Shown: in pieces, positions 1 to 47,300 of the stretch
How positions within the stretch are numbered: position 1 is the first letter of the stretch
How the letters are laid out: every line of letters begins with the position of its first letter
Assembly: GCF_003918875.1 (NCBI RefSeq)
Contig: NW_025765586.1
Coordinates: forward strand, 1-64,000
Source of the DNA: Haliotis rubra
Lineage: Eukaryota
Direction: 5' to 3'
DNA length: 64,000 nucleotides
Notes under the pieces: model-generated
Told to the model about the DNA's origin: nothing
The model's database searches: none
Seen by the model: only the letters and a program-made list of their open reading frames with translations
Made by a program: the position numbers and the translations under genes

Positions 1-1143
1 GTTTCCTATGCAGAGTTTGGTCGTAAATGGAGACTCGCACCATTTCAATATAGGGCTCGGAAGCTAAGCTCTTCGGACTTGTACATTGCAATTCTAGGAA
101 AACTACTCTCTGAAGAAGAAAAATAAATTCTTAGATATCGTTGTCGGTGAATTTGGTCTTGGAAGTGATATCAGGAACCCAATGTACAGAAACCATCCAT
201 CTTCTTCTTCTTGACTGGGCATATATTTATCAGCACAATGCCCAGATATTCACCTTTTACAACGTCAGGATGTCATGAGAAAAGTGGTGGCTTTCTTTGC
301 TCACATATACTTGCTGAACTTAAAGGGCAAGCAAGCATCAGCTACAGCATCCTAGACCAAGACCCACAAGGAGAGGGATATTGTAAAACACCAGGTTCTG
401 GAAGAGACTTCTATGACACAATGACATACTCTGCGGAAGGTAGACAGTCAGTTCCATAACTCCGAGAGAAAGATTGTACCTCACGTTTTAGTTACAGTCA
501 GCGGAGCGGCAGCTCTCGCCATTCTTCTACATAACGAACGACCAAAAGCCAAGTCATGTAAAGGCTCTCTTTCAGGGTTGGTTCCATCCGACAGAAGTGG
601 AAGATCCACCTATAGCAATAATATCTGAATGCACAGAAGAAAGCAACTCTGGCTACCGACCAGCCAGTTCCACGTCTCCAACTCCATGGTAACCGTTCCT
701 GCTGGAAGCGAGTTTATTGCGCTACCAGTTCCACACAACCCACAACTTTGCCCATGTCTCTACTGCTGACGTTAGGAACACCTACTTCACTCCAACCGGC
801 ATAGTTTGTCCCAATTCATAACACCGTCGTCGATGTTAAAGTAAACGTCCCGGAACATTGGCAACCTTTGACTTGTGTCGTCTGAGATAAGTATCAGTTT
901 CCAGTATGAAGTTCCCCATCAGAAACTAAAGACGGTGATTGTGAACGGTCACTCATGATACTCCTTCGGTCTTCTGACCCACAATGGCCCGGATGGGGCT
1001 ACTTCGTCTGGGAGGTCTTTGAGTCACAACGTTCTACCAACAACTCTGCTACAATTCCAATCACAACAATGACGTCAGAGCTGAGCTTCGCTGAGTCTGA
1101 GGTTATGTATCCAACTGTAGCGGTGATCGTTGGAAGTCACTGG
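1..1143 (+). pseudogene. GH86-like porphyranase/agarase copy A: 3' part of exon 3 only, truncated by the window edge and heavily indel-disrupted
   Basis: Colinear with exon 3 of copy E from ~29744 (GESHHFH ... GGYVSTVAVIVGSH). Many scattered indels; the stop position reads TGG instead of TGA; AATAAA at 1175. The indel density suggests poor consensus rather than a proven pseudogene. Confidence 0.8.
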
Positions 1144-3215
1144 CGGTTATTCATGTAAGGAATCTAACTGATTGAATAAATCTTAATATTATAAAAAACT
1201 TAATATTTGTACTAAATTTATCGCCAATTCATGAAATGCGTATTATATGTAACTAAGTACATCTAGATGCATGTACGACATTGGTTATGGAGTGTTGAAG
1301 GTGTTGAATGGATTTTTACCTATAGATGGCACTGTGCACCTGAAAGCTGATATTGATATTAATGCCAGTGCCAAGACTTGTTCTAATTCATTAAAAAACC
1401 AATTCACTTAAAGTGAGTGCAAAATACCCAGATGCATAGGAATTGGTCATGCAGTCTTGATCTTCTTTGATGGTCAGCGTACAACGCAAAACACAATTTT
1501 GCAGATTCTGATGATACCGTTCGGTATGGACTTACAGTAACAATTTATTAAACATACAAAAACGCATGATGAAACACTTCGCCAAGCGCGAAATCGGATG
1601 TTCAAAAGATTCACTAAATTCACCCTAATAGGGTGAAAAGAAATTGAATTTCAACGGCTGTTCTGTGCTGCGCTTATGAATTGCATGCGCAGTGGATAGA
1701 GTTCCTTCCAGCTTAAAGCGGGATGCCTTGAATTATAAAGTCAGTGAGCAGCAGTAGTCTAATCTTAGTTATTGTACACAAACAACAAATAGTAAACAAT
1801 CTAACTTGATACGTAAAGGAACGCATGTTAAGGATCTAGGACGTTTTCTGCTGTATGTCGAACAGTGGGTGGTTCGATATCTAAGCTATCGGAAAACCTT
1901 CACTTCTGTTGAGTAGTGGCTATTTTCTTGAAATCGTAATTGTTATTTATTCACAGGCGCGAGCTTTTATATGTTATGACAATAGGATTACCGATTTAAC
2001 TGTGTATATATAGTCTCATTTGACTATTTCACCACACGTTCTTCTTACCGAGTCACTTTCGATACTTAAAGCACATGTCATTATTTAGCGTTGTCAAATT
2101 TCTAACTGTGATATAGATATGCCTCTGTCACGAACCATAAACTCAATGTCTGTTTTATTGACACCTGGGTGTCTACTTACTGCCTATCTGCTAATGATAA
2201 TATACAATATACAACTTCCATCACTAACCACAGGCAATTTGAATTCGACACCTATCAGGCTTTCGCCATAAAAACGCATTGATTTATGGCTCGTGCACCT
2301 GAGTTCTGTCTCTGTCGCATTATGTAATTACACAGACAGGCAAGTGTGATAATTGTACACATGACATCTTTATGATGTTTGTTGATTGCAAAATGTTATA
2401 CACAAAAATAAGCATGTATTTACAAACCCAACATTTTTATACACACTAAAGAGCCCTGAGTGTATCGGCAAAGGAACCTAGATAATGAAAGACTTCATTA
2501 CACTTAAGTGCACGCCACCCAGCTCTGACTGGATTCGGGTATCCTGGGTGCTTCGTTTCGAGTGAAGTAAACCCTAGTACCAAATATTGCACTTTTGATT
2601 TGCGTGATTGCACGCTTATAATTTTGTTTTTATTTTTTTTTTTTCATAATCAGCAATGTATTTTATATGTCATGAATAAATGATAATTGTGTTTTAACTA
2701 TGTTTTATGCTTTTGGTTGCATCTAAGCTTTAAGGATTGAATGAGTCTTATTCATTTTACCTCTTTGATGAAGTCCATACAGGCTTGAACATGCATATTA
2801 CAGCCAAGGAGAACAAAGATATCATTATGTAGATCCCGCATTGGAACTTTTCTTAAATATTTCTTGTCCTGACATAGTTTTTTATATGTTTGGCACCGAA
2901 TAAGGGATTCCACATCTGAAGTTCCCCCAGCAAAAATATGGTGGTCGTAAGAGGCCAAATCTGTTGGGTACTCAGGCTCTGTGGCACTGTTTATGGTGTG
3001 TCAATATACAATGCCTCATAATATGATTCAGTGGATTGCCTTGTCCACCCCTTCTTAACAGACCGTCATTAAAAGGTGCAGGAATACACCATGCACACAA
3101 GCATGACATGTTCACCGTTGGAATGACAATAAGTCATGCACATGGGCATGGAATGTTCTAAATATCCTTCGTTTACTGTTTAATACCTTATGTACCTATG
3201 TTCTGTGTATCGTAA

Positions 3216-3388
3216 GGGGGAGGGGTAGCCTAGTGGTTAAAGCGTTTGCTTAGACCCGAAGCAACCCGGGTTCGATTCCCTTACATGGGTACAATGTGTG
3301 ACGCCCATTTCTGGTGTCCCCTAACGCCGTGATATTGTTGGAATATTGCTGAAAGCGGTGTAAAACCATACTCACTCACTCACTCACT
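3216..3388 (+). mobile_element. tRNA-derived SINE (family A)
   Basis: A box TAGCCTAGTGG, B box GGTTCGATTCC, (CACT)n tail, target-site duplication (TSD) TGTATCGTAA. Confidence 0.9.
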
Positions 3389-3474
3389 GTATCGTAACGT
3401 TCTTGAATGCAGCAGTCAGAAGAACAACAACCATATTACACTAGCTCTTAATTGAGATGCATAAGTTTTATTTC

Positions 3475-3620
3475 AATTTGTTTGACCTTTATTACTTTAG
3501 AAATTGGAAACGGTGTGCAGACCTTTGGACATAGTTCTAACCATTTAGATATTTAGACTTACATCCTGCAACAAGTATGGATGCAAGTGGAGGCTCACAC
3601 CATTTCCATGGCAGTTCTTA
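3475..3620 (+). pseudogene. Degenerate ~145-bp fragment of GH86-like exon 3
   Basis: TTGTTTGACC...AATTGGAAACGG...ACAAGTATGGATGCAAGTGGAGGCTCACACCATTTCCATGG matches the LFDR..FRNWK..YTSMDVSGGSHHFHG segment. Confidence 0.75.
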
Positions 3621-6364: not shown

Positions 6365-6435
6365 GATACAGCCTTGTTAGCTGATTGTCACTGATTCTCT
6401 TGTTTGTTGATATATCTATCGTGATAGCAGCAGAG

Positions 6436-9400
6436 ATGAAATATCTTACACTTTTCGTGTGTATTCTATCAACTGCAAGGTGTGATTACACCGTGTCCAT
6501 TTATCCTGAAATTCTCAAGATTGGGGCCGCATACTCATTTCAACCACGGGCGATGGAATGGTAAGAATGGACTGGACAGCTCAACAACTATTCCTCTTGT
6601 CAAGGGAGTTGGCGCAACCGCAGCCAGATGGTTGAACAGAGATTTGGGAAATGGGTTATTTGAGAAGGTAAGACACATTATATTGTTTCTGAAACTTTAA
6701 TGAGAATTGTTAATTGTCTTCCCTTAAAAGAGTGAGTGAGTGCGTTGTATTTAAAGCCGCATGGAAGAAGAAGAAGAAGAAGAAGAAGAAGAAGGGTTTA
6801 TTTTGTATAAATGCCATACGACCCATCGTACAAGGTGGTACAATGGTGATTTTGGTTACCATTTTCATACAACAACGCTAACAGGAGCAGAATAAACATG
6901 TTCTAAGAACTTGACAAAATTATTTATGATGTTATTGTCGGATGATGTGCATATGCTGCGGAGTGAATAATAATATCCATGGACCGTTTTCGGAATGTAA
7001 CGCCGACGCATATCCTCATAGCGTTTACAAATATAGACAATATGGATTTCATCCTCAATACTTTTACAGTGTTTACATATCATCATTGCAGGAGGCAGTA
7101 CCTATTCTAATATATTTGATACCTAGTGCATTACACCCTGATCTAAATAATGTGAACAGACGCTTGCACTTATTACTTATGTTCAATGATAAATATTTTT
7201 CACAGGTCAACAGAGATTTATGGGACTTATAGAAAGACAGCGAAGGAACATCTAGGGACAAATGCCACAAATGCACATGGAAGAATGTACCACTTACATC
7301 ACAGCGTGACTGCTTGATATGGGAGGAATGTTTTAGACTTTAGACTTTGATGATACCTACGATCAGGTTATGTTGTTCACATGTCCAGAAACCCGAAAGA
7401 GACGAATAGGGATTGTTACCATAGGTTTCTGGCATGCTCAAGGGACGTAGGGCGGTGGGGTAGCATAGTGGTTAAAGCATTGGCTCGTCACGCCGAAGAC
7501 CCGGGTTCGATTCCCCACATGGGCACAATGTGTTAAGCCCATTTCTGGTGTCCCCCGCCGTGATATTGCTGGAATATTGCTAAAAGCGGCGTTAAACTAA
7601 ACTCAGTCAGTCAGTCAGTCAAGGGACGTATTTCTGCATTTTGAATTGCTGTGTCAGGGTCAGCGTCACTCCTGCACCCTTTCATTTAATGGCTTATCCC
7701 AAAGTTCATTAGATTACCAAACTTAATGACTATTTAACCTTCTATCACGTTTCATGGCAGGCACCTGAGGACCCCCACAAGAAGGGCTATCCTGACCCGA
7801 AGTACTTCGAGGCGAATCAAAATAAGATCAGCAGCAATTACTTAAACGTTATGAATGGATACGGAAACCCTGAAATGGTCATGGAAATAAAAGGTATTTC
7901 AACATTTACACCCAAATGAATAAATGGGTGGAGGAATGTCTCTTGAGATTACATACCCCTGCCATACTATAGTTTGGCATGAAATGCATGTGGACCCGTT
8001 TTTTTGTAAATATCTCTTCATCCAATGACCCAATCGATCTCAAACTGTGCAAGTGGATGTTTTGTCAGACAACCTAATCACATTGTAAATCGCCGATTTT
8101 ATGCATTTGTATTAAAGAATCTGTCTATGTAACTGTCAACAAAATAAACAGCAGACCGCAGACTGCTTGCAGAGGTAGGGAGCCAAATGACCTGTAACAG
8201 CGGCAGTGTTGGGTCATAAAGGTAAAAGGCATTTCATGCCAAACTATAATCTTCTGTAGTCGGAAATATGTATATGTTAATTTGTATGCTCTGTACGTGA
8301 GAAATGCCAACACTGTTGATTTGCATTGTCCTGGCACCACTCATGCTGACATAGTGCCGGATTTTGCTGTCTGTGTAGGCCTCTTTAAATATACCGATGT
8401 GAGTTGGTGTTTCCGGATAGGTCTTCGGACGACAGAATGGCAGTAACCAGAACCAAGCTGACATCTATGTCAACGAATGTGTTCACTTGTGTATGGATGA
8501 AACAGATGGCATGTTCTAGCACTACCGGTATTACCGGTTTACCGGTATACCGTAATACGCTTTTCAGAAGATATGTATTACAATATTTTTTTTCAGAACC
8601 ATAACATATATTTTTATAGGGACTTATCATGTACAGTCTAAGTAAACTTAGATTCAGTATTATTTGTTACACTGCTATATTGAGTCTAACAAAACCTTGT
8701 GGAAGGTCGCGTCAGGTAACCTTTGTTGGACCTATGACCATCCAATCAAAGGCGAGACGGCCGAACGGATTTAACCAATCAGCCAACGGCTACTATTTAG
8801 GGTTCGGCGAGACTTACAAAATGGATTTTCCCGTCCCCGGTCGCCAACACTGATCTCCCAACAAACGAAAATCCGCATAAAACACATATATTTGACCTGC
8901 AGTATATGCGCTTTGGGGTTCCTGTTGACATGGTTATCATAAGCTAATATTTCCTCAAGTTGACATGCTTGAATACTGACAAATGCTATTTTCAGCGAAT
9001 GTTTACCTACTGCTGTGGCGTGCATCACTACGAACCGATCGTACGGAAAATAGCATTCGGAATCGTTCGGGTACAAACTTTTCGAGGTAAAAGGTTCAAA
9101 GTTCGCGATTTGGTAAGCTGTGTTCTGATTGGTCAATTGAAAGGTTACCTAACGCGACCTTCTACTAGGTTCTGTGAGACTCAGAATAGCATTGTAACGA
9201 ATAATACTGAGTCTAAGTTTACTTCGGTAAGTTTACTTAGACTGTTATAATGTAGAAAATAGGATAGGCATGTACAATTAGTGTCACTTACTGTCTAACA
9301 CTTAATTTCGAATAAGTCGCAATACGTATCGCAATACGGGTACCTGAATCTATTTGCCAATACACAGCCCTATCATATCAAAGGTTTTATACACTTGAAC

Positions 9401-11272
9401 GACCAGGCAGAGATGCCGCTTTTCACGATGTGACTGGACAGTATGCTTCACAAGGTGTGCTGCGTTTTGGCAAACCCTTTCAAACTGAAACCTTGTTTTC
9501 ATTGCCTGAAGTGTGCTACTAAACAGTGGCATCATCGACATATTATCATCGTCGATAGGTACATCACTATGATGAAATACATTAGGGGTTGCTTAATTAA
9601 GTTCCATGTGTATATAACGAGCGGTTGTGTACTTTTTAATCTACGTATTCTCAGCAATTCTATAACCCTTTTCTCATCTGTTATTACGGTGATACTCGCT
9701 GGATGTTGAGTATTGAATGTATTGCCTGTTGAAATATGACAATTTAATCAACTGTTGAAAGTGGAGTTAGACCCTGCTCACTCTAATTCATAGGTTTGAT
9801 AATACATATTCAGGTGTGTATTGGCCTCACTGGATGGACACCTCTGCCCACCACGGATTCTTCCTGAACAACATCGATGCTGCAGCTGAGTTCGTCTTCC
9901 TGCTGGTCGATGCAGTCAACAAAGGAACCAAAGGACAAGCACCTATGTTCTTCGAAGTCATCAATGAACCAGAAAGTCAATGGAAGAACACGGACTGGAA
10001 TACCTTTATCAAATTTCATCAGGCTGTTGCTCTCGAAAATTAAGGCAAAATATCCCCATATGAGGGTTGGAGGTCCAACGTTAACTGGGGCTTCCATTTT
10101 GTTTGATCGTAATGACTTTAGGAATTGGAAACAGTATGCAGACTTTTTTGATATGGGTCTCAACAATTTAGATTTTTTCTCATTTCATTCCTACACAAGT
10201 ATGGATGTAAGTGGAGGCTCACACCATTTCCATGGGAGTTCCGAAGCTAAGCTTTTGGACTTCTGGATCTAGTTGAGAGCTACTCATAAGAAGAAAAATA
10301 AGTTGTTGGATATTATAGTCAGTGAATTTGGTCTCGGTCCAGTATCAGGACTTGATGTACAGAAGCCATCCACCTTTCTTGACTGGGCATACATTTACCA
10401 ACACAATGCCCAGATATTCACCTTTCTACAACGTCGGATGTCATGAGAAAAAGCCGTAGCTTCTGCTCACATATACTGACCTTAAAAGGGCAAGTATTAA
10501 CTCATAGCATTCTGGACAAGACCCACAAAGAGAGGGACATTGCCCAAGCTTTCAGGTTCTGGAAGAACTTCTATGATACAATGACATACTTACGAGTAGA
10601 CAGTCAGTTCCACAACCTGAGAGAAAGATTGTACCTCACGTTTTAGTTGATCAAACGAAACGGCGGCCTAACCATTCTTCTACATAACTATGACCAAAAG
10701 CCAAGTCATGTAAAGCTCTTCGACAAGGGTTGGTTCCATCCGACAAGTGGAAAGTCCACCTGTGAATATCTGAATGCACAGAAGAAAGCAACTCTAGCTA
10801 CAAACCAGCCAGTTCACGTCTCCAACTCTATGGTAACCGTTCCTGCTGAAGCGAGTTGTTACTTCCAGTTCCACACACTGTAAGCCACAACTTGCCCATG
10901 CTCCTACTGTGACCCAGAAAACGTACTACTCCACCGACATGGTTGTCCCATTCACAACACCGTCGTCGATGTTAAAGTTAACGTCCCGAACATTGGCAAC
11001 CTTGACTTTGTTCGTCTGAGAGTTGGTGTCAGTTTCAGCATAAAATCTCCCCATCAGAAACTCAAGACGGTGGTTGTGAACGGTCACTCCTTGACGTCCT
11101 TCTATTCTTCTGCAGACTCACAGTGGCTCTGTGAAGACACTGTATGGGAGGTCTTTGAGTACAACGTCCCCAACAACGTTGTACACCAACACAACAACGA
11201 CGTCAAACTTAGCTTCTCTCTGAGACTGGGGGTTATGTATCAACTGTGGCAGTGATCGTTGGAAGTCACTGA
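6436..11272 (+). CDS. GH86-like beta-porphyranase/agarase copy B (exons 6436-6667, 7761-7893, 9814-11272; several small frameshifts in this assembly)
   Basis: Signal peptide MKYLTLFVCILSTARC; GAGAAG|GTAAG donor; GCAG|GCACCT exon 2 (APEDPHKKGYPDPKYF..., 133 bp); CAG|GTGTG acceptor; EVINEP and VSEFG motifs; TGA at 11270-11272; AATAAA at ~11304. Near-identical to copy F. Confidence 0.8.
6765..7276 (-). mobile_element. 5'-truncated LINE 3' end in intron 1 of copy B
   Basis: ORF2 C-terminal-like FRSGCNALGI and CKHCKSIEDEIHIVYICKRYEDMR; AATAAA followed by a (TTC)n tail; TSD CATGGAAGAA. Confidence 0.8.
7450..7618 (+). mobile_element. tRNA-derived SINE (family A)
   Basis: A/B boxes, (CAGT)n tail, TSD TCAAGGGACGTA; orthologous insertion at 37120-37289. 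Confidence 0.9.
8631..9247. mobile_element. MITE with ~90-bp terminal inverted repeats (TIRs), nested in a hAT-like MITE (8518-9371)
   Basis: TACAGTCTAAGTAAACTTAGA...GGAAGGTCGCGTCAGGTAACCTT is mirrored by AAGGTTACC..CGCGACCTTC...GTTTACTTAGACTGT. Duplicate at 38321-38940. Confidence 0.8.
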
Positions 11273-15200: not shown

Positions 15201-15930
15201 TGCCCAAGCTTTCAGGTTCTGGAAGAACTTCTATGACACAATGACGTACTTGCGAGTAGACACTCAGTTCCATAACTCCGAGAGAAAGATTGTACCTCAC
15301 GTTTTAGTTGATCAACGGAACGGCAGCCTCACCATTCTTCTACATAACTATGACCAAAAGCCAAATCATGTAAAGCTCTCTTTCGACAAGGGTTGGTTCC
15401 ATCCGACAAGTGGAAAGTCCACCTGTGAATATCTGAATGCACAGAAGAAAGGAACGCTGGCAACAAACCAGCCAGTTCACGTCTCCAACTCCATGGTAAC
15501 CGTTCCTGCTGAAGCCAGTTGTTACTTCCAGTTCCACACAAGCCACAACTTTGCCCATGCTCCTACTGTGACCCAGAATACCTACTACTCCACCGACATG
15601 GTTGTCCCCATTCACAACACCGTCGTTGATGTTAAAGTTAACGTCCCGAACATTGGCAACCTTGACTTTGTTCGTCTGAGGGTTAGTGTTAGTTTCAGCA
15701 TGAAGTCTCCCAATCAGAAACTCAAGACAGTGGTTGTAAACTCTCACACCTTAACGTCCTTCTACGGCCTGCAGACCCACAATGGCCCGGATGAGGCTAC
15801 AGTCTGGGATGTCTTTGAGTACAACGTCCCCAACAACCTGCTACACCAACACAATAACGACGTCAAACTTAGCTTCTCTGAGACCGGGGGTTATGTATCA
15901 ACTGTGGCAGTGATCGTCGGAAGTCACTGA
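12250..15930 (+). CDS. GH86-like beta-porphyranase/agarase copy C (exons 12250-12480, 13703-13835, 14467-15930; single +1 T at ~15080)
   Basis: Exons of 231, 133 and 1464 bp with GT-AG boundaries and compatible phases (0, then 1). ORFs 14418-15137 and 15007-15930 join if one T is removed from a T run. NEP and SEFG motifs; AATAAA at 15962. Confidence 0.85.
13351..13653 (-). mobile_element. L2/CR1-type LINE 3' fragment in intron 1 of copy C
   Basis: TFGRKSFACSAPLLWNSLP...SFKRLLKTHLF; (TTA)n tail; TSD AGATGTGAA; absent from the equivalent site in copies D and G. Confidence 0.85.
13958..14412. repeat. Unclassified interspersed repeat in intron 2 of copy C (also 21057-21478 in copy D)
   Basis: Local inverted repeat ACAATTATTGACTTC...GAAGTCAATAATTGT with a CCAATCAG end motif; looks like a non-autonomous DNA element. 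Confidence 0.4.
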
Positions 15931-30000: not shown

Positions 30001-30835
30001 GTCATGAGAAAAGCTGGTAGCTTTCTTGCTCACATATACTGAACTTAAAGGGCAAGCAAGCATCAACTACAGCATCCTAGACAAGACCCACAAGGAGAGG
30101 GATATTGCTCAAGCTTTCAGGTTCTGGAAGAACTTCTATGACACAATGACATACTTGCGAGTAGACAGTCAGTTCCATAACTCCGAGAGAAAGATTGTAC
30201 CTCACGTTTTAGTTGATCAACGGAACGGCAGCCTCACCATTCTTCTACATAACAACGACCAAAAGCCAAGTCATGTAAAGCTCTCTTTCGACAAGGGTTG
30301 GTTCCATCCGACAAGTGGAAAGTCCACCTGTGAATATCTGAATGCACAGAAGAAAGCAACTCTAGCTACAAACCAGCCAGTTCACGTCTCCAACTCTATG
30401 GTAACCGTTCCTGCTGAAGCGAGTTGTTACTTCCAGTTCCACACAACCCACAACTTTGCCCATGCTCCTACTGTGACCCAGAACACCTACTACTCCACCG
30501 ACATTGTTGTCCCAATTCACAACACCGTCGTCGATGTTAAAGTAAACGTCCCGAACATTGGCAACCTTGACTTTGTTCGTCTGAGGGTAAGTGTCAGTTT
30601 CAGCATGAAGTCTCCCCATCAGAAACTAAAGACGGTGATTGTGAACGGTCACTCCTTGGCGTCCTTCTACGGTCTACAGACCCACAATGGCCCGGATGAG
30701 GCTACTGTGTGGGAGGTCTTTGAGTACAACGTTCCCAACAACCTGCTACACCAACACAACAATGACGTCAAACTGAGCTTCGCTGAGTCTGGAGGTTATG
30801 TATCAACTGTGGCAGTGATCGTTGGAAGTCACTGA
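27084..30835 (+). CDS. GH86-like beta-porphyranase/agarase copy E (exons 27084-27314, 27538-27670, 29372-30835; single +1 at ~30015)
   Basis: Exons of 231, 133 and 1464 bp with canonical splice sites; EIINEP and VSEFG motifs; ORFs 29374-30042 and 30026-30835 join after removing one base; AATAAA at 30866. Confidence 0.85.
27862..28014. repeat. Minisatellite, ~20-22-bp unit GAATATGTCACACCTCTGGT, ~7 copies, in intron 2 of copy E
   Basis: Direct tandem repeats visible in the sequence. Confidence 0.9.
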
Positions 30836-33016: not shown

Positions 33017-33104
33017 TTATCGTAACGTTCTTGAATGCAGCAGTCAGAAGAACAACAACCATATTACACTAGCTCTTATTTGAGATGCATAAGTTTTATT
33101 TCCA

Positions 33105-33248
33105 ATTTGTTTGACCGTTATTACTTTAGAAATTGGAAACGGTGTGCAGAACCTTTTGGACATAGTTCTAACCATTTAGATATTTAGACTTACATCCTAC
33201 ACAAGTATGGATGCAAGTGGAGGCTCACACCATTTCCATGGCAGTTCT
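33105..33248 (+). pseudogene. Degenerate fragment of GH86-like exon 3 (duplicate of 3475-3620)
   Basis: Same sequence within the duplicated block. Confidence 0.75.
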
Positions 33249-36517: not shown

Positions 36518-39500
36518 ATGAAATATCTTACACTTTTCGTGTGTATTCTATCAACCGCAAGGTGTGATTACACCGTGTCCATTTATCCTGAAATTCTCAA
36601 GATTGGGGCCGTTACTCATTTCAACCACGGGCGATGGAATGGTAAGAATGGACTGGACAGCTCAACAACTATTCCTCTTGTCAAGGGAGTTGGCGCAACC
36701 GCAGCCAGATGGTTGAACAGAGATTTGGGAAATGGGTTATTTGAAGGTAAGACACATTATATTGTTTCTGAAACTTTAATGAGAATTGTTAATTGTCTTC
36801 CCTTAAAATGAGTGTCTTCCCTTGGAAGTTTAGTGCCATACGACCCATGAGGTGCGATTTTTGTTACCATTTTCATTTAAACAGCTGAATTGAAGATGAT
36901 GTTACCACGGAGTGAATAATAATATCCATGGACATCATACAGCGTGACTGGCTTGATATGGGAGGAATGTTTTATTTGGTGCTTTACAGATCTTTGATGA
37001 TACCCATGATCAGGTTATGTTGTTCACATGTCCAGAAACCCGAAAGAATGTTTTAGACGAACAGGTTATGTTGTTCACATGGATTGTTACCATAGGTTTC
37101 TGGCGTGCTCAACGGACGTAGGGCGGTGGGGTAGCCCCGTGGTTAAAGCGTTGGCTCGTCACGCCGAAGACCCGGGTTCGATTCCCCACATGGGCACAAT
37201 GTGTTAAGCCCATTTCTGGTGTCCCCCGCCGTGATATTGCTGGAATATTGCTAAAAGCGGCGTTAAACTAAACTCAGTCAGTCAGTCAGTCAAGGGACGT
37301 ATTTCTGCATTTTGAATTGCTGTGTCAGGGTCAGCGTCACTCCTGCACCCTTTCATTTAATGGCTTATCCCAAAGTTCATTAGATTACCAAACTTATTGT
37401 CTCATTTCAGACACACATAATGACTATCTAACCTTCTATCACGTTTCATGACAGGCACCTGAGGACCCCCACAAGAAGGGCTATCCTGACCCGAAGTACT
37501 TCGAGGCGAATCAAAATAAAATCAGCAGCAATTACTTAAACGTTATGAATGGATACGGAAACCCAGAAATGGTCATGGAAATAAAAGGTATTTCAACATT
37601 AACACCCAAATGAATAAATGGGTGGAGGAATGTCTCTTGAGATAATATACCCCTGCCATACTATAGTTTGGCATGAAATGCATGTGGACCCGTTTTTTTG
37701 TAAATATCTCTTCATCCAATGACCCAATCGATCTCAAACTGTGCAAGTGGATGTTTTGTCAGACAACCTAATCACATTGTAAATCGCCGATTTTATGCAT
37801 TTGTATTAAAGAATCTGTCTATGTAACTGTCAACAAAATAAACAGCAGACCGCAGACTGCTTGCAGAGGTAGGGAGCCAATGACCTGTAACAGCGGCAGT
37901 GTTGGGTCATAAAGGTAAAGGCATTTCATGCCAAACTATAATCTTCTGTAGTCGGAAATATGTATATGTTGATTTGTATGCTCTGTACGTGAGAAATGCC
38001 AACACTGTTGATTTGCATTGTCCTGGCACCACTCATGCTGACATAGTGCCGGATTTTGCTGTCTGTGTAGGCCTCTTTAAATATACCGATGTGAGTTGGT
38101 GTTTCCGGATAGGTCTTCGGACGACAGAATGGCAGTAACCAGAACCAAGCTGACATCTATGTCAACGAATGTGTTCACTTGTGTATGGATGAAACAGATG
38201 GCATGTTCTAGCACTACCGGTATTACCGGTTTACCGGTATACCGTAATACGCTTTTCAGAAGATATGTATTGCAATATTTTTTTCAGAACCATAACATAT
38301 ATTTTTTTAGGGACTTATCATGTACAGTCTAAGTAAACTTAGATTCAGTATTATTTGTTACACTGCTATACTGAGTCTAACAAAACCTTGTGGAAGGTCG
38401 CGTCAGGTAACCTTTGATGGACCTATGACCGTCCAATCAAAAGCGAGACGGCCGAACGGATTTAACCAGTCAGCCAACGGCTACTATTTAGGGTTCGGCG
38501 AGACTTACAAAATGGATTTTCCCGTCCCCGGTCGCCAACACTGATCTCCCAACAAACGAAAATCCGCATAAAACACATATATTTGACCTGCAGTATATGC
38601 GCTTTGGGGTTCCTGTTGACATGGTTATCATAAGCTAATATTTCCTCAAGTTGACATGCTTGAATACTGACAAATGCTATTTTCAGCGAATGTTTACCTA
38701 CTGCTGTGGCGTGCATCACTACGAACCGATCGTACGGAAAATAGCATTCGGAATCGTTCGGGTACAAACTTTTCGAGGTAAAAGGTTCAAAGTTCGCGAT
38801 TTGGTAAGCTGTGTTCTGATTGGTCAATTGGAAAGGTTACCTGACGCGACCTTCTACTAGGTTCTGTGAGACTCAGTATAGCAGTGTAACGAATAATACT
38901 GAGTCTAAGTTTACTTCGGGTAAGTTTACTTAGACTGTTATAATGTAGAAAATAGGATAGGCATGTACAATTAGTGTCACTTACTGTCTAACACTTAATT
39001 TCGAATAAGTCGCAATACGTATCGCAATACGGGTACCTGAATCTATTTGCCAATACACAGACCTATCATATCAAAGGTTTTATACACTTGAACGACCAGG
39101 CAGAGATGCCGCTTTTCACGATGTGACTGGACAGTATGCTTCACAAGCGTGTGCTGCGTTTTGGCAAACCCTTTCAAACTGAAACCTTGTTTTCATTGCC
39201 TGAAGTGTGCTACTAAACAGTGGCATCATCGACATATTATCATCGTCGATAGGTACATCACTATGATGAAATACATTAGGGGTTGCTTAATTAAGTTCCA
39301 TGTGTATATAACGAGCGGTTGTGTACTTTTTAATCTACGTATTCTCAGCAATTCTATAACCCTTTTCTCATCTGTTATTACGGTGATACTGCTGGATGTT
39401 GAGTATTGAATGTATTGCCTGTTGAAATATGACAATTTAATCAACTGTTGAAAGTGGAGTTAGACCCTGCTCACTCTAATTCATAGGTTTGATAATACAT

Positions 39501-40968
39501 ATTCAGGTGTGTATTGGCCTCACTGGATGGACACCTCTGCCCACCACGGATTCTTCCCGAACAACATCGATGCTGCAGCTGAGTTCGTCTTCCTGCTGGT
39601 CGATGCAGTCAACAAAGGAACCAAAGGACAAGCACCTATGTTCTTCGAAGTCATCAATGAACCAGAAAGTCAATGGAAGAACACGGACTGGAATACCTTT
39701 ATCAAATTTCATCAGGCTGTTGCTCGGAAAATTAAGGCAAAATATCCCCATATGAGGGTTGGAGGTCCAACGTTAACTGGGGCTTCCATTTTGTTTGATC
39801 GTAATGACTTTAGGAATTGGAAACAGTATGCAGACTTTTGGATATGGGTCTCAACAATTTAGATTTTTTCTCATTTCATTCCTACACAAGTATGGATGTA
39901 AGTGGAGGCTCACACCATTTCCATGGGAGTTCCGAAGCTAAGCTTTTTGGACTTCTGGATCTAGTTGAGAGCTACTCTCATAAGAAGAAAAATAAATTGT
40001 TGGATATTATAGTCAGTGAATTTGGTCTCGGTCCAGTATCAGGACTTGATGTACAGAAGCCATCCACCTTTCTTGACTGGGCATACATTTACCAACACAA
40101 TGCCCAGATATTCACCTTTCTACAGCGTCGGGATGTCATGAGAAAAGCCGTAGCTTTCCTGCTCACATATACTGAACTTAAAGGGCAAGCAAGTATTAAC
40201 TATAGCATTCTGGACAAGACCCACAAAGAGAGGGACATTGCCCAAGCTTTCAGGTTCTGGAAGAACTTCTATGATACAATGACATACTTACGAGTAGACA
40301 GTCAGTTCCATAACTCCGAGAGAAAGATTGTACCTCACGTTTTAGTTGATCAACGAAACGGCGGCCTAACCATTCTTCTACATAACTACGACCAAAAGCC
40401 AAGTCATGTAAAGCTCTCTTTCGACAAGGGTTGGTTCCATCCGACAAGTGGAAAGTCCACCTGTGAATATCTGAATGCACAGAAGAAAGCAACTCTAGCT
40501 ACAAACCAGCCAGTTCACGTCTCCAACTCCATGGTAACCGTTCCTGCTGAAGCGAGTTGTTACTTCCAGTTCCACACAACCCACAACTTTGCCCATGCTC
40601 CTACTGTGACCCAGAAAACGTACTACTCCACCGACATGGTTGTCCCCATTCACAACACCGTCGTCGATGTTAAAGTTAACGTCCCGAACATTGGCAACCT
40701 TGACTTTGTTCGTCTGAGAGTTGGTGTCAGTTTCAGCATAAAATCTCCCCATCAGAAACTCAAGACGGTGGTTGTGAACGGTCACTCCTTGACGTCCTTC
40801 TATTCTCTGCAGACTCACAGTGGCTCTGGTGAAGACACTGTATGGGAGGTCTTTGAGTACAACGTCCCCAACAACGTTGTACACCAACACAACAACGACG
40901 TCAAACTTAGCTTCTCTGAGACTGGGGGTTATGTATCAACTGTGGCAGTGATCGTTGGAAGTCACTGA
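36518..40968 (+). CDS. GH86-like beta-porphyranase/agarase copy F (exons 36518-36746, 37455-37587, 39507-40968; -2 at the end of exon 1 and -1 at ~39838)
   Basis: Same exon layout as the other copies. Lesions are TTTGAAG for TTTGAGAAG and a T4 run for T5. Near-identical to copy B. Confidence 0.82.
37120..37289 (+). mobile_element. tRNA-derived SINE (family A), duplicate of 7450-7618
   Basis: A/B boxes, (CAGT)n tail. Confidence 0.9.
38321..38940. mobile_element. MITE nested in a hAT-like MITE (duplicate of 8631-9247)
   Basis: Same TIRs and same host element. Confidence 0.8.
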
Positions 40969-42268: not shown

Positions 42269-45200
42269 ATGGAATGGTTGGCACTGTTCGTGTGTCTACT
42301 ATCAAGTGTAACATGTGATTACACAGTGTCCATTTATCCTGAAATTCTCAAGATTGGGGCCGTTACTCATTTCAACCACGGGCGATGGAATGGTAAGAAT
42401 GGACTGGATTCACCGGCAAGTATTGCTCATGTTAAGGAGGTTGGAACGACGGCAGCTCGATGGTTGAACAGAGATATGGCAGGGGGACTATTTGAGAAGG
42501 TAGGACATTGATGTACTGGATAAGCACATGGTAGCGGTATAGTTATTTTCTTATTTATGTACATTTAACTGATCAACATTGTGGTTTTAGATATGTGGAT
42601 TCTAAGCGAATGCTTCTATGCCGGGAGTACAATTTGAAACCAGACGTCAGCATGTAGATTCTCTTATTTCTCAAAGTTTGTTTTTTGCCTTTATGCCCTC
42701 TTGATATGAATGATTAAGCAAGCAGGGGTATTCAATAAAAATGTCCCACAACTATTGATATTTTATATCATTAATGAGATAAATAGTTTAACAGTATCAC
42801 AGAAACATCTGACTGAGATTTGCATTCATCGTTGAACGTCACATGACCATAGATTGTGTTCTTAGAGTGGCCAAAACGCCATACTGTCCATCAGGTCCTT
42901 TCCTATGAAAAGCAAAACCCATTAATATCGGGTGAATCCACCTCTGTTCTCCTCAAGAAAATCCCCCCATTCAACGATGCATATTCCTAATGAAACTTCT
43001 AATATCAACTTAGTTCAATTCATCCAATTCAATTTTAATCAATCCGAATACATAACGTTGGTCCAACGACGATTGACTTAATCCTGCCGTTCTTGACACA
43101 CCGACGTCTTGCAGTAATATGAGATTCCGCATTATTAACCCTGTGTCCTCTCATAACATCGGTGTTTTCCCTGAAGCTCATCTCCGATTTGAGAGGCACT
43201 TTGACCACAAACCAAACAGCCCGTCTTGTGCGGCAGTTGCTGCCCTCGGTTGTGTCATCAACATTGTTCACGCTATCGTAACAGGATGGCCAATGACGTA
43301 ATAATTACACATATTGCAGTGAGTGAGTTTAGTCTTACGCCGTACTCAGCAATATTCCAGCTATGTGGTCTGTAAAAAATCGTGTGTGGACCAGACCATC
43401 CAGTGATCAACAGCATGAGCATCGATCTGCGCAATTGGGAACCGATGACATGTGTCTGACCACCCGATCCCGTTAGTGACCTCTTACGACAAGCATGGGT
43501 CACTGAAGGCCAGTATTCTAACCCGGACCTTCACGGGTCACACATAGTGCATTGAACTTTGAACTGATATTATACCACTTTCATCATTGACACTGTTGAC
43601 TATATCCTGTCTCAACTAACACTGAAACATTCAGCAAAACCATTGTTACCAGCCACAATGTTTTTAAATGTGATGAGGTAACTATGAATAACTAAGACTG
43701 TATTCCATTTCATGGCAGGCATCTCAAAACCCCAACAAGAAGGGCTACCCTGACCCCAAGTACTTTCAGACCCATCAAAAGGAAATCTGCACCAAATACT
43801 TGGACAATATGAATGGATATCACAATCCGGAAGTTGTCATGGAAATAAAGGGTAATTCAGTTTTTTATCTTGTTTAAATTAAAGACAATTTCTTAAATAT
43901 GTTAAAATATTTGCAGAAGGTTGAGAATACAAGCATGTCTTTCATTATCCAATGGAAAGATTGTATAGCTGAGAGGAATGGTTACGGTGGAATTAAACAA
44001 ATTCCACAATTGACAAGCGGAAAATTTTGTTTAAGATTCTCACGATTAAAATGGGGATATTACATGTAAAACAAACTGTGTTTGAGATCGGGATCGGGAA
44101 GTAGCTCCACACACACCACCACACCACACATCANNNNNNNNNNNNNNNNNNNNNNNNNNNNNNNNNNNNNNNNNNNNNNNNNNNNNNNNNNNNNNNNNNN
44201 NNNNNNNNNNNNNNNNNNNNNNNNNNNNNNNNNNNNNNNNNNNNNNNNNNNNNNNNNNNNNNNNNNNNNNNNNNNNNNNNNNNNNNNNNNNNNNNNNNNN
44301 NNNNNNNNNNNNNNNNNNNNNNNNNNNNNNNNNNNNNNNNNNNNNNNNNNNNNNNNNNNNNNNNNNNNNCTCTATTCATATAAACAACTATCAGAGAAAG
44401 AAGAGGGAGGGCTACAAACAGTTGCCTTATGTCTATTGGTGTTATCGTTACCCACCTGGTTTGTATCCAGGTGTCACTTGGCCTCACTGGATGGACACCT
44501 CTGCCCACCACGGATTCTTCCCGAACAACATCGATGCTGCAGCTGAGTTCGTCTTCCTGCTGGTCGATGCAGTCAACAAAGGAACCAAAGGACAAGCACC
44601 TATGTTCTTCGAAGTCATCAATGAACCAGAAAGTCAATGGAAGAACACGGACTGGAATACCTTTATCACATTTCATCAGGCTGTTGCTCGGAAAATTAAG
44701 GCAAAATATCCCCATATAAGGGTTGGTGGTCCAACGTTAACTGGAGCTTCCATTTTGTTTGATCGTAATGACTTTAGGAATTGGAATCGGTATGCAGACT
44801 TTTTGGATATGGGTCTCAACAATTTAGATTTTTTCTCATTTCATTCCTACACAAGTATGGATGTAAGTGGAGGCTCACACCATTTCCATGGGAGTTCCGA
44901 AGCTAAGCTTTTCGGACTTCTGGATCTAGTTGAGAGCTACTCTCACAAGAAGAAAAATAAATTGTTGGATATTATAGTCAGTGAATTTGGTCTCGGTCCA
45001 GTATCAGGACTTGATGTACAGAAGCCATCCACCTTTCTTGACTGGGCGTACATTTACCAACACAATGCCCAGATATTCACCTTTCTACAGCGTCGGGATG
45101 TCATGAGAAAAGTGGTAGCTTTCCTGCTCACATATACTGAACTTCAAGGGCAAGCAAGTATCAACTATAGCATTCTGGACAAGACCCACAAAGAGAGGGA

Positions 45201-45933
45201 CATTGCTCAAGCTTTCAGGTTCTGGAAGAACTTCTATGATACAATGACGTACTTGCGAGTAGACAGTCAGTTCCATAACTCCGTGAGAAAGATTGTACCT
45301 CACGTTTTAGTTGATCAACGGAACGGCAGCCTTACCATTCTTCTACATAACTACGACCAAAAGCCAAGTCATGTAAAGCTCTCTTTCGACAAGGGTTGGT
45401 TCCATCCGACAAGTGGAAAGTCCACCTGTGAATATCTGAATTCACAGAAGAGAGCAACGCTGGCAACAAACCAGCCAGTTCACGTCACTAACTCCATGGT
45501 AACCGTTCCTGCTGAAGCGAGTTGTTTCTTCCAGTTCCACACAACCCACAACTTTGCCCATGCTCCTACTGTGACCCAGAACACCTACTACTCCACCGAC
45601 ATTGTTGTCCCCATTCACAACACCGTCGTCGATGTTAAAGTTAACGTCCCGAGGATTGGCAACCTTGACTTTGTTCGTCTGAGAGTTGGTGTCAGTTTCA
45701 GCATGAAGTCTCCCCATCAGAAACTCAAGACGGTGGTTGTGAACGGCCACACCCTGACGTCCTTCTACGGTCTACAGACCCACAGCGGCCCTGGTGAAGA
45801 CACTGTATGGGAGGTCTTTGAGTACAACGTCCCCAACAACGTTGTACACCAACACAACAACGACGTCAAACTTAGCTTCTCTGAGACTGGGGGTTATGTA
45901 TCAACTGTGGCAGTGATCGTTGGGAATCACTGA
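42269..45933 (+). CDS. GH86-like beta-porphyranase/agarase copy G, intact 608-aa ORF (exons 42269-42499, 43719-43851, 44471-45933)
   Basis: 231+133+1463 = 1827 nt open frame; signal peptide MEWLALFVCLLSSVTC. Putative acid/base Glu in VINEP (codon 44623-44625, about E173) and nucleophile Glu in VSEFG (44983-44985, about E293). AATAAA at 45965. Intron 2 contains an N gap. Confidence 0.9.
43319..43539 (-). mobile_element. SINE family B in intron 1 of copy G
   Basis: Consensus match; TSD CACACATA(T/G)TGCA. Confidence 0.85.
44134..44369. other. Assembly gap (N run) in intron 2 of copy G
   Basis: Run of N. Confidence 1.
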
Positions 45934-46029
45934 GTGTTCAACATGCAAGTTATCCTAATAACTGAATAAATATTTTCAAAACCTCAATAGTTATACTCAA
46001 ATATATCACCAAGTGAAGTGCAATTGGGG

Positions 46030-46842
46030 AGTGAATGAGTTTAGTTTTACGCCGCTTTTAGCAATATTCCAGTAATATCACGGCGGGGCTTGACATGCTG
46101 TGGCCATGTGGGGAATCTGAAGTACAAACAATCAATACTACATCTGTTAGTCTTTCAATCATAATGGACGACCATAGCTTGTAAATAACATTTCTAAAAC
46201 CCTTCTTCATTGTTTTTTTTGTTTTCTGTTTGTTGTTTAACCCCCCACTCAGCAATATTCCAGCTGTATGGCGGCATTCTGTAAATAATCGAGTCTGAAC
46301 CAGACAATCCAGTGACTGACGTTGTGGGCAACAATCTACGCAATTGAGTGAGTGAGTTGGTGAGTTTAGTTTTACGCCACACTCAGCAATATTCCAGCTG
46401 TATGGAGGTGGTCTGTAAAGAATCGAGTCTGGACCAGACAAGCCAGTGATCAACAGTATGAGCATCGATCTGCGCAATTGGGCACCGATGACATGTGTCA
46501 ACCAATTCATCAAGCCTAACCAACCAATCCCGTTTGTCACCTTTAACGACAAGTATGGGTTGGAGACCAATTGTACCCCGGATCGTCGTGATACATTTCT
46601 TGATGAAGGAAACAGTATTGAGGCAAATATTTTCACTTCGGCTTTAAATAAAAGATGGATATAGTGGTACACTGCCTTAGATTTTCCCGTTCAGTATCAA
46701 TAACAAAGCAGTGAGTTGGCAATATTCCGGCAATATCAGAGCGGGGGAAAAGGGCTTCACACATTGTACCCATGTGGGGAATCGAACCCGGGTCTTCGGC
46801 GTGACGAGCGAACGCTTTAACCACTTGGCTACCCCGCCGCCC
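46030..46842 (-). mobile_element. Cluster of SINEs: family A fragments (46030-46115, 46715-46842) and family B (46245-46340 partial, 46345-46583)
   Basis: Reverse-complement matches to both consensuses. Confidence 0.8.
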
Positions 46843-47069
46843 GTTTAATACACTGAAACTGTATTGGAGTTGATAAACAGCGTGACAGCATGGTACGTAG
46901 GATGTGAGTGACTGAGTGAGTGGATCGGAGTGGGTGAATGAATGAGCGTCCTCAGCTCCCTGACATGGAACGTTTAAGAGAGTCAGTTTTTCAGCCTGTA
47001 CGTCTCGAGTGTGTAAGGAAGTTTGATTTTACCCAACATGAACAATACAATAGTAATATCACGTCTTAC

Positions 47070-47300
47070 CTGTTCAAATAATCCATTTCTCAAATCTCTA
47101 TTCAACCATCTGGCAGCTGTTGCCCCAAATTCCTTCACATAAGGAATAGTTGTGGGGCTGTCCAGTCCATTCTTACCATTCCATCGCGAGTGTCTGAGAT
47201 GAGTAACTGTCCCAATCTTCAATATTTTAGGATAAATCGACACAGTGTAATCACATCTGGCGCTTTATAGTATACAAATGAGAAGAGTCAGCCATTTCAT
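47070..47300 (-). pseudogene. Inverted orphan exon 1 of the GH86-like gene (copy H, E-type)
   Basis: 231-bp exon MKWLTLLICIL*SARCDY...LRNGLFEQ|GTAAG with an in-frame TAA at codon 12. Followed by ~150 bp resembling copy E intron 1. No exon 2 or 3, and the promoter block is absent. Confidence 0.88.

What the first reader, a model, noticed from the sequence alone, without database searches (positions are those of the whole stretch)
1..47300. Tandem array of intron-containing, secreted GH86-like (porphyranase/agarase) genes in an animal genome
Seen: at least seven same-strand copies of a 3-exon, 608-aa signal-peptide protein with the clan GH-A catalytic pair (INEP; VSEFG, 120 residues apart), embedded among SINEs and LINEs. 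Known: GH86 beta-agarases and porphyranases are characterised from marine and gut bacteria (e.g. BpGH86A of Bacteroides plebeius), and animals are generally assumed to rely on microbes to digest agar and porphyran. The segments DFFSFHSY, GSSEA..LDLVESYS..K, ISEFG-like and the terminal SF.ETGGYVS resemble the BpGH86A catalytic barrel and C-terminal beta-sandwich (recalled, not searched). Inference: an endogenous, amplified system for digesting red-seaweed galactans in a seaweed-eating mollusc.
Basis: partly seen in the sequence, partly recalled or inferred. Interest (0 to 1): 0.95.

Follow-up and report, generated by a model that had tools for sequence, protein, structure and literature searches.

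The report
Abalone GH86 agarase-like gene array
An abalone chromosome carries a tandem cluster of intron-containing genes for a secreted enzyme of family GH86, so far characterised only in bacteria that digest red-seaweed agar and porphyran; only one copy reads intact as assembled, and no biochemical activity has been tested.

Summary
The window is Haliotis (abalone) DNA. It holds seven same-strand copies (A-G) of a 3-exon gene, two short exon-3 relics and one inverted orphan exon 1.

Only copy G (42269-45933) reads intact, at 608 aa. C and E each carry one 1-nt frameshift, and F carries two lesions. D has seven frameshifts and a stop. A and B are a ~97% identical re-copy of E-F with about ten times the usual indel load, probably unpolished assembly.

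The N gap lies inside intron 2 of G and removes no codon.

The GH86 assignment holds. The only strong hits among solved structures are GH86 agarases and the porphyranase BpGH86A, by sequence (E 1e-42 to 4e-28; GH39 next at 4e-4) and by fold (TM 0.73-0.81; next <=0.5). Both catalytic glutamates (E173, E293) are present.

The family forms one clade in abalone, mussel and chiton. Both introns sit at the same position and phase in abalone and chiton. So this is an old resident mollusc family, not contamination and not abalone-specific.

Substrate and expression are untested. RefSeq already names the orthologues "beta-porphyranase A-like", but I found no paper on an animal GH86. The scan has no such finding on other DNA.

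The parts
42269..45933 (+). Copy G, the only intact gene as assembled. Exons 42269-42499, 43719-43851 and 44471-45933; 608 aa. N-terminal hydrophobic leader aa 1-16, acid/base E173 (INEP), nucleophile E293 (VSEFG).
   Evidence: Spliced ORF with AG/GT junctions. Colinear with P0001. PDB and Pfam hits. It is a mosaic: exons 1-2 resemble C (dS 0.04), exon 3 resembles F/B (dS 0.09-0.11) rather than C (dS 0.28).
44134..44369 (.). Assembly gap (N) inside intron 2 of copy G.
   Evidence: The flanks are colinear with the gap-free intron 2 of the H. asinina orthologue. No coding sequence is affected.
36518..40968 (+). Copy F. Exons 36518-36746, 37455-37587 and 39507-40968. Two lesions: 2 nt missing at the end of exon 1, and 1 T missing from a T5 run at ~39836.
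   Evidence: No in-frame stop once the indels are set aside.
27084..30835 (+). Copy E. Exons 27084-27314, 27538-27670 and 29372-30835. One extra C at ~30014.
   Evidence: No other stop; dN/dS about 0.2-0.25 against the other copies.
19806..23001 (+). Copy D. Exons 19806-20036, 20848-20980 and 21532-23001. Seven frame-shifting indels and a stop at codon 362; probably a pseudogene.
12250..15930 (+). Copy C. Exons 12250-12480, 13703-13835 and 14467-15930. One extra T in a T-run at ~15078. It carries the second type of catalytic core (RNSEAKI...QFNVIVSEFGLGPLTGID).
   Evidence: Orthologue of H. asinina P0003.
6436..11272 (+). Copy B. Exons 6436-6667, 7761-7893 and 9814-11272. Near-copy of F (dS 0.025) with 17 indels in exon 3 and 1 in exon 1.
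3..1142 (+). Copy A: the 3' two-thirds of an exon 3, cut by the window start. Near-copy of E with about 47 small indels.
3471..3617 (+). Relic exon-3 fragment (aa ~217-264). Its counterpart is at 33100-33247.
33100..33247 (+). Relic exon-3 fragment between E and F.
47074..47300 (-). Copy H: an inverted orphan exon 1 (ATG to GT donor, 67% aa identity to G), with no exons 2-3 downstream of it.
43318..43540 (.). SINE-like dispersed repeat in intron 1 of G. Nine further copies in both orientations lie at 16015, 25222, 46360, 47399, 53289, 55021, 58059, 58731 and 62356.
   Evidence: No tRNA or Rfam match.

Best explanation
SHOWN
- The window is abalone (Haliotis) nuclear DNA carrying a tandem array of genes of glycoside hydrolase family GH86.
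- Each gene has three exons (about 77 aa, about 44 aa, about 487 aa).
- The fold has the three-part GH86 layout: a (beta/alpha)8 barrel followed by two beta-sandwich domains.
- The clan GH-A catalytic pair is present: acid/base E173 in NEP, and nucleophile E293 in SEFG. E293 aligns to the residue mutated in the BuGH86 E322Q crystal structure.
- The array belongs to a mollusc-wide family (abalone, mussel, chiton) that forms one clade. Both introns share position and phase in abalone and chiton, so the family has been resident in mollusc genomes for a very long time.
- The copies evolved as coding genes (dN/dS 0.2-0.3) and exchange segments. The N-terminal exons, the catalytic core (aa ~205-300) and the C-terminal half have three different histories.
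- Two catalytic-core types are shared across three Haliotis species, while the C-terminal half is homogenised within each species.

INFERRED
- The protein is secreted, probably from the digestive gland into the gut.
- It works as a retaining endo-beta-1,4-galactanase on agar-type red-algal galactans (agarose, porphyran, funoran).
- The residue that forms the base of the sulfate pocket in the porphyranase (Ser) is Met or Ile in the two solved agarases. It is Leu (L341) in all copies here, which leans towards agarose-like recognition at subsite -2.
- The family most likely entered an early mollusc from bacteria.
- As assembled only G is intact. C and E are one base away from intact, and may be assembly errors or very young pseudogenes.
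For: - Species and orthologues.
- Gene model.
- GH86 by sequence: (window exon 3 against 5TA1, E 7e-18, over 442 residues). (family profile: 8H97 1e-42, 5TA1 4.5e-42, 4AW7 3.6e-28; next GH39 at 4e-4). (Pfam BPA_C and Porphyrn_cat_1).
- GH86 by fold: orthologue model, pLDDT 88, pTM 0.91; top 7 PDB hits all GH86, TM 0.73-0.81; next best <=0.5.
- Nearest non-mollusc relatives come from agar-degrading marine bacteria.
- One mollusc clade, SH-aLRT 100.
- Identical intron positions and phases in chiton and abalone, and the same layout in mussel and in a distant abalone paralogue.
- Purifying selection and mosaicism.
- Subsite -2 residue: alignments read against PMC5849685.
Against: - No enzyme assay and no expression data.
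- The signal peptide was judged by eye only.
- The structure model is of the 89%-identical H. asinina orthologue, not of G itself, because the spliced protein has no reference to hand in.
- The subsite inference rests on a profile alignment at about 18% identity. It also assumes that the paper's 'M396' is a transposition of M369.
- The family occurs in filter-feeding mussels too, so seaweed grazing is not its only context.
- Six of the seven copies are broken as assembled.
- G's 5' and 3' halves have different nearest paralogues and are joined across an assembly gap. The same combination does exist, gap-free, in H. asinina.
- The direction and donor of any horizontal transfer are not established. 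The sister branch is long and holds sequences of uncertain origin from protist datasets.
Confidence: 0.7

Rival explanations
1. The array is largely dead. The frameshifts are real, G is the single surviving gene, and A-F are young pseudogenes left behind by duplication and unequal crossing-over.
For: - Six of seven copies are broken as assembled.
- D has a substitution-made stop as well as indels.
- Relic fragments and an orphan inverted exon 1 show real decay in the array.
- The E lesion and the F exon-1 lesion are not in homopolymers.
- In H. asinina a near-identical upstream duplicate also changes frame.
Against: - B, C, E and F have no in-frame stop once the indels are set aside. dN/dS between copies is 0.2-0.3.
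- C and E need only one base each.
- The C lesion and one F lesion are single-T changes in T-runs, which is typical of long-read error.
- The A-B block has an indel/mismatch ratio of 0.66, against 0.04-0.18 elsewhere. That looks like sequencing noise, not decay.
- Both core types have intact orthologues in two other species.
Confidence: 0.35
2. It is a true GH86-fold enzyme but not an agarase or porphyranase. The mollusc clade may have shifted to another substrate (other sulfated galactans, microalgal or bacterial exopolysaccharides, or an endogenous glycan) or to a non-digestive role.
For: - The mollusc clade sits on a long branch (0.62) away from the characterised enzymes, at only 16-19% identity to the solved GH86 structures.
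- The family is present in mussels, which do not graze seaweed.
- Some abalone paralogues lack the nucleophile (P0013, 'FSAHGL'), which hints at non-catalytic uses within the family.
Against: - All characterised GH86 enzymes known to me act on agar-type galactans.
- The nearest bacterial relatives come from agarolytic genera.
- The catalytic pair and the C-terminal porphyranase-type domains are conserved.
- Abalone eat red algae, and gut agarase activity is expected in the literature.
Confidence: 0.2
3. It is bacterial contamination or a mis-assembled bacterial gene, or it belongs to another clan GH-A family (GH39, GH5, GH30).
For: Weak Pfam hits to Cellulase (GH5) and GH39. All characterised GH86 enzymes are bacterial.
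Against: - Two spliceosomal introns with GT-AG, and a SINE-like repeat inside intron 1.
- GC content is about 40% throughout.
- Orthologues lie on chromosome-scale scaffolds in four other Haliotis species, in Mytilus and in a chiton, and where checked they have the same three-exon layout.
- GH86 structures beat every other family by more than 24 orders of magnitude in E-value and by 0.25-0.3 in TM-score.
Confidence: 0.01

Closest known systems
BuGH86, the beta-agarase of Bacteroides uniformis NP1 (PDB 5TA0, 5TA1, 5TA5; PMC5849685)
   Same: - Best solved-structure match by sequence (E 7e-18 for exon 3 alone; 4.5e-42 for the family profile) and by fold (TM 0.77-0.80).
- Barrel plus two Ig-like domains.
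- The NEP acid/base is conserved, and the nucleophile aligns exactly to E322.
- A bulky hydrophobic residue (Met there, Leu here) sits at the position that is Ser in the porphyranase.
   Different: - About 18% identity.
- The abalone gene has two introns and a eukaryotic-type leader peptide.
- It sits in a tandem paralogue array rather than a polysaccharide utilisation locus.
- Its activity is untested.
Aga86A_Wa, a GH86 beta-agarase (PDB 8H97)
   Same: Best profile hit (1.1e-42) and highest TM-score (0.81/0.80). Ile at the sulfate-pocket position.
   Different: 17% identity. It is a bacterial protein of 742 residues with extra sequence.
   Same: Same family and fold (E 3.6e-28, TM 0.73-0.78). 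The C-terminal domain matches Pfam BPA_C, which was built on it.
   Different: It is the most distant of the three solved GH86 enzymes. Its sulfate-pocket Ser326 corresponds to Leu here, so porphyran-type recognition at subsite -2 is not indicated.
RefSeq 'beta-porphyranase A-like', 'beta-agarase-like' and 'funoran endo-beta-hydrolase-like' proteins of Haliotis asinina, H. rufescens, H. rubra, H. cracherodii, Mytilus and Liolophura
   Same: Direct orthologues and paralogues (36-90% identity; the nearest are 82-90%). Where checked, they have the same three-exon layout and also form tandem arrays.
   Different: These are automatic names only. I found no publication or assay. The window's own species is not among them.
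Other endogenous algal-polysaccharide enzymes of abalone (alginate lyase, GH45 cellulase)
   Same: They are host-encoded digestive carbohydrate-active enzymes. The host origin of alginate lyase is shown in PMC6181387, and a GH45 cellulase is described in PMC11025796 (listed).
   Different: They belong to different families and act on different substrates. Red-algal galactan breakdown in abalone is currently credited to gut bacteria.

Membership tests
CAZy family GH86 | Significant sequence similarity to characterised GH86 catalytic modules, stronger than to any other GH family | tested here: met
   - Window exon 3 against 5TA1: E 7e-18 over residues 43-484.
- Family profile: 8H97 1.1e-42, 5TA1 4.5e-42, 4AW7 3.6e-28; best non-GH86 hit (GH39) 4.4e-4.
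CAZy family GH86 | (beta/alpha)8 barrel followed by two beta-sandwich (Ig-like) domains | tested here: met
   - AF2 model of the 89%-identical, same-length orthologue P0001: pLDDT 88.4, pTM 0.91.
- The seven best PDB matches are all GH86 over the full length, TM 0.73-0.81; the next families reach <=0.5.
- Pfam BPA_C and Porphyrn_cat_1 hits on the window's own exon 3 are both below the gathering score (26.1 vs 26.2 bits; 19.1 vs 27 bits).
- The model is of the orthologue, not of G itself.
CAZy family GH86 (clan GH-A retaining mechanism) | Acid/base Glu in the N-E-P motif and nucleophile Glu about 120-130 residues later | tested here: met
   - E173 (INEP) aligns to the NEP of 5TA1, 8H97 and 4AW7.
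- E293 (VSEFG) aligns to the Glu that is Gln in the 5TA0 E322Q mutant (PMC5849685).
- Both are present in all copies B-G. E173 is invariant, and E293 is conserved in at least 90% of 30 mollusc sequences.
CAZy family GH86 | Endo-hydrolysis of beta-1,4 galactosidic bonds in agarose or porphyran | not testable with these tools
   This needs recombinant enzyme and substrate assays.
beta-porphyranase (BpGH86A-type specificity) | A pocket for the 6-sulfate of L-galactose-6-sulfate at subsite -2, based on a small residue (S326), with F77 filling the kink | tested here: inconclusive
   - By profile alignment, S326 of BpGH86A ('PFVS') aligns to Met in BuGH86 ('PFAM'), Ile in Aga86A_Wa and Leu341 here ('AFLL'; all copies).
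- That leans agarase-like. The alignment is at about 18% identity.
- The paper's residue number for the Met (M396) fits the chain only if read as M369.
- The F77/T82 position could not be mapped.
Horizontally acquired bacterial gene in an animal | Animal sequences nested within bacterial diversity, a patchy animal distribution, and integration in host DNA | tested here: inconclusive
   - Integration and long residence are shown by the conserved introns.
- In the searches run, animal hits came only from molluscs.
- Of 650 relatives, the named ones outside molluscs are marine bacteria.
- The tree is unrooted. The mollusc clade is one long branch whose neighbours (P0045, P0055, P0079) come from protist datasets of uncertain purity.
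- No donor or direction of transfer is shown.

The most novel reading that the evidence does not exclude
Molluscs have carried their own GH86 family since before chitons, bivalves and gastropods diverged, probably after an ancient transfer from bacteria. It would be the first animal-encoded agarase/porphyranase family.

In abalone the family has expanded into tandem arrays. Gene conversion homogenises most of each gene within a species. Selection, however, keeps at least two distinct catalytic-core types across species.

This would mean that part of the gut agarase activity now credited to bacteria is the animal's own.
Probability: 0.5. Interest if true: 0.75.

Novelty: new member of a known kind. 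Interest (0 to 1): 0.62.

Why it matters
Breakdown of red-seaweed galactans (agar, porphyran) in marine grazers is generally attributed to gut bacteria (PMC5870069 and PMC6181387). All characterised GH86 enzymes I know of are bacterial.

A host-encoded, secreted GH86 family would change how host and microbiome share algal digestion in a major aquaculture animal. It would give defined targets for feed and breeding work, and add a source of eukaryote-expressed agarases.

It would also add an old case to the list of carbohydrate-active enzymes that animals seem to have taken from microbes.

The claim is directly testable with one recombinant protein and existing RNA-seq data.

One limit on novelty: the orthologues are already in RefSeq under automatic 'porphyranase-like' names. 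What is new is the recognition and analysis, not the sequences.

Tried and rejected
- NCBIfam: no hit.
- Rfam and tRNA scans for the SINE-like repeat: nothing.
- Pfam on 15 non-GH86 ORFs for LINE or transposon domains: nothing credible.
- Nine literature searches for animal GH86, agarase or porphyranase found no relevant paper.
- The metazoan HGT compendium's tables are not held as text.
- DNA for two unnamed relatives (P0029, P0046) could not be fetched. The gene neighbours showed that P0046 is bacterial and that P0029 sits on a gene-poor, eukaryote-like contig.
- Mapping the published subsite residues by number failed for M396 and T82. Only the Ser/Met pocket position could be placed, by alignment.
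- I did not model G itself, because the spliced protein has no reference and long sequences must not be typed. The same-length orthologue was modelled instead.
- Rejected: that the high divergence at aa ~205-300 reflects positive selection. dS is raised together with dN there (dS 0.75-0.89, omega 0.17-0.25), and the two types are shared across species. It is therefore old retained divergence, not fast evolution.


Full report
WHAT IS THERE

The window is abalone DNA. The exon-3 protein of copy G finds 38 relatives. The best hits are Haliotis asinina (90%) and H. rufescens (85%). More distant paralogues occur in H. rubra and H. cracherodii, in Mytilus and in the chiton Liolophura. RefSeq labels many of them 'beta-porphyranase A-like' or 'beta-agarase-like'.

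Exons 42269-42499, 43719-43851 and 44471-45933 join through AG/GT sites into a 1827-nt open frame of 608 aa. The product aligns without a single gap to the 608-aa H. asinina protein P0001, at 89% identity.

THE ASSEMBLY GAP

The N run 44134-44369 lies in intron 2 of G, 283 nt after exon 2 and 101 nt before exon 3. It removes no codon.

I compared only the read flanks with the gap-free orthologous gene of H. asinina (locus L001). Both flanks match its single intron 2 in the same order and orientation. The joint is therefore plausible, though it remains a scaffold join.

This matters because G is a mosaic. Its exons 1-2 are closest to copy C (dS 0.04). Its exon 3 is closest to F and B (dS 0.09-0.11) and far from C (dS 0.28). 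The same combination is found in P0001 on uninterrupted sequence, which argues against a join artefact.

THE COPIES

tblastn, blastn and exon-by-exon alignment give seven + strand copies:
- A: 3-1142, partial.
- B: 6436-11272.
- C: 12250-15930.
- D: 19806-23001.
- E: 27084-30835.
- F: 36518-40968.
- G: 42269-45933.

There are also two 150-nt exon-3 relics (3471-3617, 33100-33247) and an inverted orphan exon 1 (H, 47300-47074).

Only G is open. The lesions in the others are:
- C has one extra T in a T-run (~15078).
- E has one extra C (~30014).
- F lacks GA at the end of exon 1 (~36745) and one T of a T5 run (~39836).
- D has seven frame-shifting indels and a stop at codon 362.
- B has 17 indels in exon 3 and A has about 47.

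With the indels set aside, B, C, E and F contain no stop codon. Pairwise dN/dS is 0.2-0.3. These sequences therefore evolved as coding genes until very recently, or still are coding genes.

AN ASSEMBLY-QUALITY PROBLEM

Block 1-11925 (A, relic, B) is a re-copy of 29743-41666 (E, relic, F). It shows 260 mismatches but 171 indel events in about 10 kb. That is an indel/mismatch ratio of 0.66, against 0.04-0.18 for C-G, C-D, E-F and D-G. The indels are biased towards extra bases in the first block.

Using G as a third sequence, the indels sit in A and B, not in E and F. This is the signature of unpolished long-read sequence rather than of decay.

Two unchecked first-stage notes on other pieces of this genome describe similar error patterns.

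I therefore do not count A and B as independent evidence of gene number. I treat the single-base lesions in C, E and F as undecided between error and young pseudogene.

WHAT THE PROTEIN IS

By sequence:
- The window's own exon 3 matches BuGH86 (5TA1) at E 7e-18 over residues 43-484. GH39 xylosidases follow at about 1e-5 and cover only the NEP region.
- Pfam gives weak clan-level hits (GH5, GH39), plus BPA_C and Porphyrn_cat_1, the two C-terminal domains defined on the B. plebeius porphyranase.
- A profile of 30 mollusc sequences scores 8H97 (Aga86A_Wa) at 1.1e-42, 5TA1 at 4.5e-42 and 4AW7 (BpGH86A) at 3.6e-28. The next family, GH39, scores 4.4e-4.

By fold:
- An AlphaFold model of P0001 has pLDDT 88.4 and pTM 0.91.
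- Its seven best Foldseek matches in the PDB are all GH86 over the full length (TM 0.73-0.81). Next come GH30, GH79, GH39 and GH51, at TM <=0.5.

Catalytic residues:
- E173 (INEP) aligns to the NEP acid/base.
- E293 (VSEFG) aligns to the residue that is Gln in the nucleophile mutant 5TA0 (PMC5849685).
- Both are kept in all copies.

SUBSTRATE

Pluvinage et al. (PMC5849685) place the agarose-versus-porphyran choice at subsite -2. In the porphyranase, a Ser (S326) forms the base of the sulfate pocket. In BuGH86, a Met fills that pocket.

In the profile alignments, that Ser ('PFVS') aligns to Met in BuGH86 ('PFAM'), to Ile in Aga86A_Wa and to Leu341 in the abalone proteins ('AFLL'). Leu341 is present in all copies. 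This leans towards agarose-type recognition rather than porphyran-type.

It is a weak inference, for two reasons:
- The alignment is at about 18% identity.
- The paper's number M396 fits the deposited chain only if read as M369. That reading is my assumption.

The nearest named non-mollusc relatives are from agar-degrading marine bacteria: Algibacillus agarilyticus, Gayadomonas, Flammeovirga ('beta-agarase') and Rubellicoccus.

AGE AND ORIGIN

An exhaustive profile search of 1.84 billion representatives finds only 650 relatives. There is a sharp drop from the mollusc tier (>=240 bits) to everything else (<=216 bits).

In a maximum-likelihood tree, all 40 mollusc sequences form one group (SH-aLRT 100) on a long branch. 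Their neighbours are three long-branch sequences from protist datasets (Bolivina, a Picozoa single-cell assembly and one unnamed). Whether these are eukaryotic is uncertain.

Exact gene models show that intron 1 (phase 0) and intron 2 (phase 1) lie at the same aligned positions in the chiton gene P0012 and in abalone P0001 and G. The same three-exon layout holds for mussel P0008 and for the distant abalone paralogue P0028.

Tandem copies also occur at the chiton and H. asinina loci.

The family is thus an old resident of mollusc genomes. This rules out contamination and recent transfer. An ancient bacterial origin is the most economical reading of the distribution, but the tree is unrooted and no donor is shown.

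EVOLUTION INSIDE THE ARRAY

The three parts of the gene tell different stories.

- Residues 1-121. Here {G, C, D, P0001, P0003} stand against {B, E, F, P0002}.
- Residues 205-300. This is the barrel segment between the two catalytic glutamates. It has two types. {G, B, E, F, P0001, P0002} carry GSSEAKL...LLDIIVSEFGLGPVSGLD. {C, D, P0003, P0004} carry RNSEAKI...QFNVIVSEFGLGPLTGID. C is 88-91% identical to its counterparts in two other species, but only 74% identical to G, which lies 30 kb away.
- Residues 301-608. Copies within this genome are 89-99% alike, which is as close as or closer than the orthologues.

In the core, dS is raised together with dN (dS 0.75-0.89, omega about 0.2). This is old divergence kept apart from gene conversion, not fast adaptive change. 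It suggests that two functionally distinct enzyme types are maintained.

LITERATURE

Nine full-text searches found no report of an animal GH86, agarase or porphyranase gene. Abalone gut studies credit agar and porphyran breakdown to bacteria, while showing that alginate lyase is host-made.

The sequences themselves are public under automatic names.

VERDICT

This is a genuine mollusc-encoded GH86 gene array: a new member of a known enzyme family in an unexpected host. It has one intact copy as assembled and an unresolved number of functional ones.

The 'seven intact genes' and 'LINE' details do not hold.

Noticed in passing
window 1-11925 vs 29743-41666: A ~12 kb block re-copies E-relic-F at ~97% identity but with roughly as many small indels as mismatches (ratio 0.66). 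This looks like unpolished long-read sequence or a redundant haplotype copy placed in tandem.
   Followed up: partly
window 52479-52728: A second assembly gap (250 N) downstream of the array, in a region with no recognisable gene.
   Followed up: no
window 63647-64000: A G/T-rich tandem repeat, period 28 (also 55), with about 12.7 copies, running off the end of the window. It accounts for the strong GC skew of the last 2 kb.
   Followed up: no
window 46058-46672 (-): A 204-aa ORF between copy G and the inverted exon 1, with no Pfam match. It overlaps a SINE-like repeat copy (46360-46582), so it is probably not a gene.
   Followed up: partly
P0013 (H. rufescens paralogue, not in the window): A distant abalone GH86 paralogue has 'FSAHGL' where the others have 'SEFGL'. 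It therefore lacks the nucleophile Glu and may be a catalytically dead, possibly glycan-binding, family member.
   Followed up: no
L004 11057-11362 (H. asinina, intron 2 of the P0028 gene): The last 21 codons of exon 2 are repeated four times in tandem (81-nt spacing) in the intron just downstream of exon 2.
   Followed up: no
L001 3370-6140 (H. asinina): A 97-98% identical tandem duplicate of the P0001 gene, 6.6 kb upstream, changes frame near aa 458-462. The sister species thus has a broken near-copy next to its intact gene too.
   Followed up: no
L002 (Liolophura sinensis): The chiton locus holds three GH86 copies in 23.7 kb, one of them inverted. Tandem amplification is therefore a family habit and not specific to abalone.
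   Followed up: partly
PMC5849685 text vs PDB chain 5TA1: The paper's residue 'M396' of BuGH86 does not fall on a Met under the chain offset that fits E322. M369 does, and it aligns with S326 of BpGH86A. This is probably a digit transposition in the paper.
   Followed up: partly
P0042, P0044 (Mytilus edulis, M. coruscus): GH86 fragments occur inside gene models named 'DDE-1 domain-containing' and 'CHST1'. These are probably chimeric annotations or transposon-disrupted copies.
   Followed up: no
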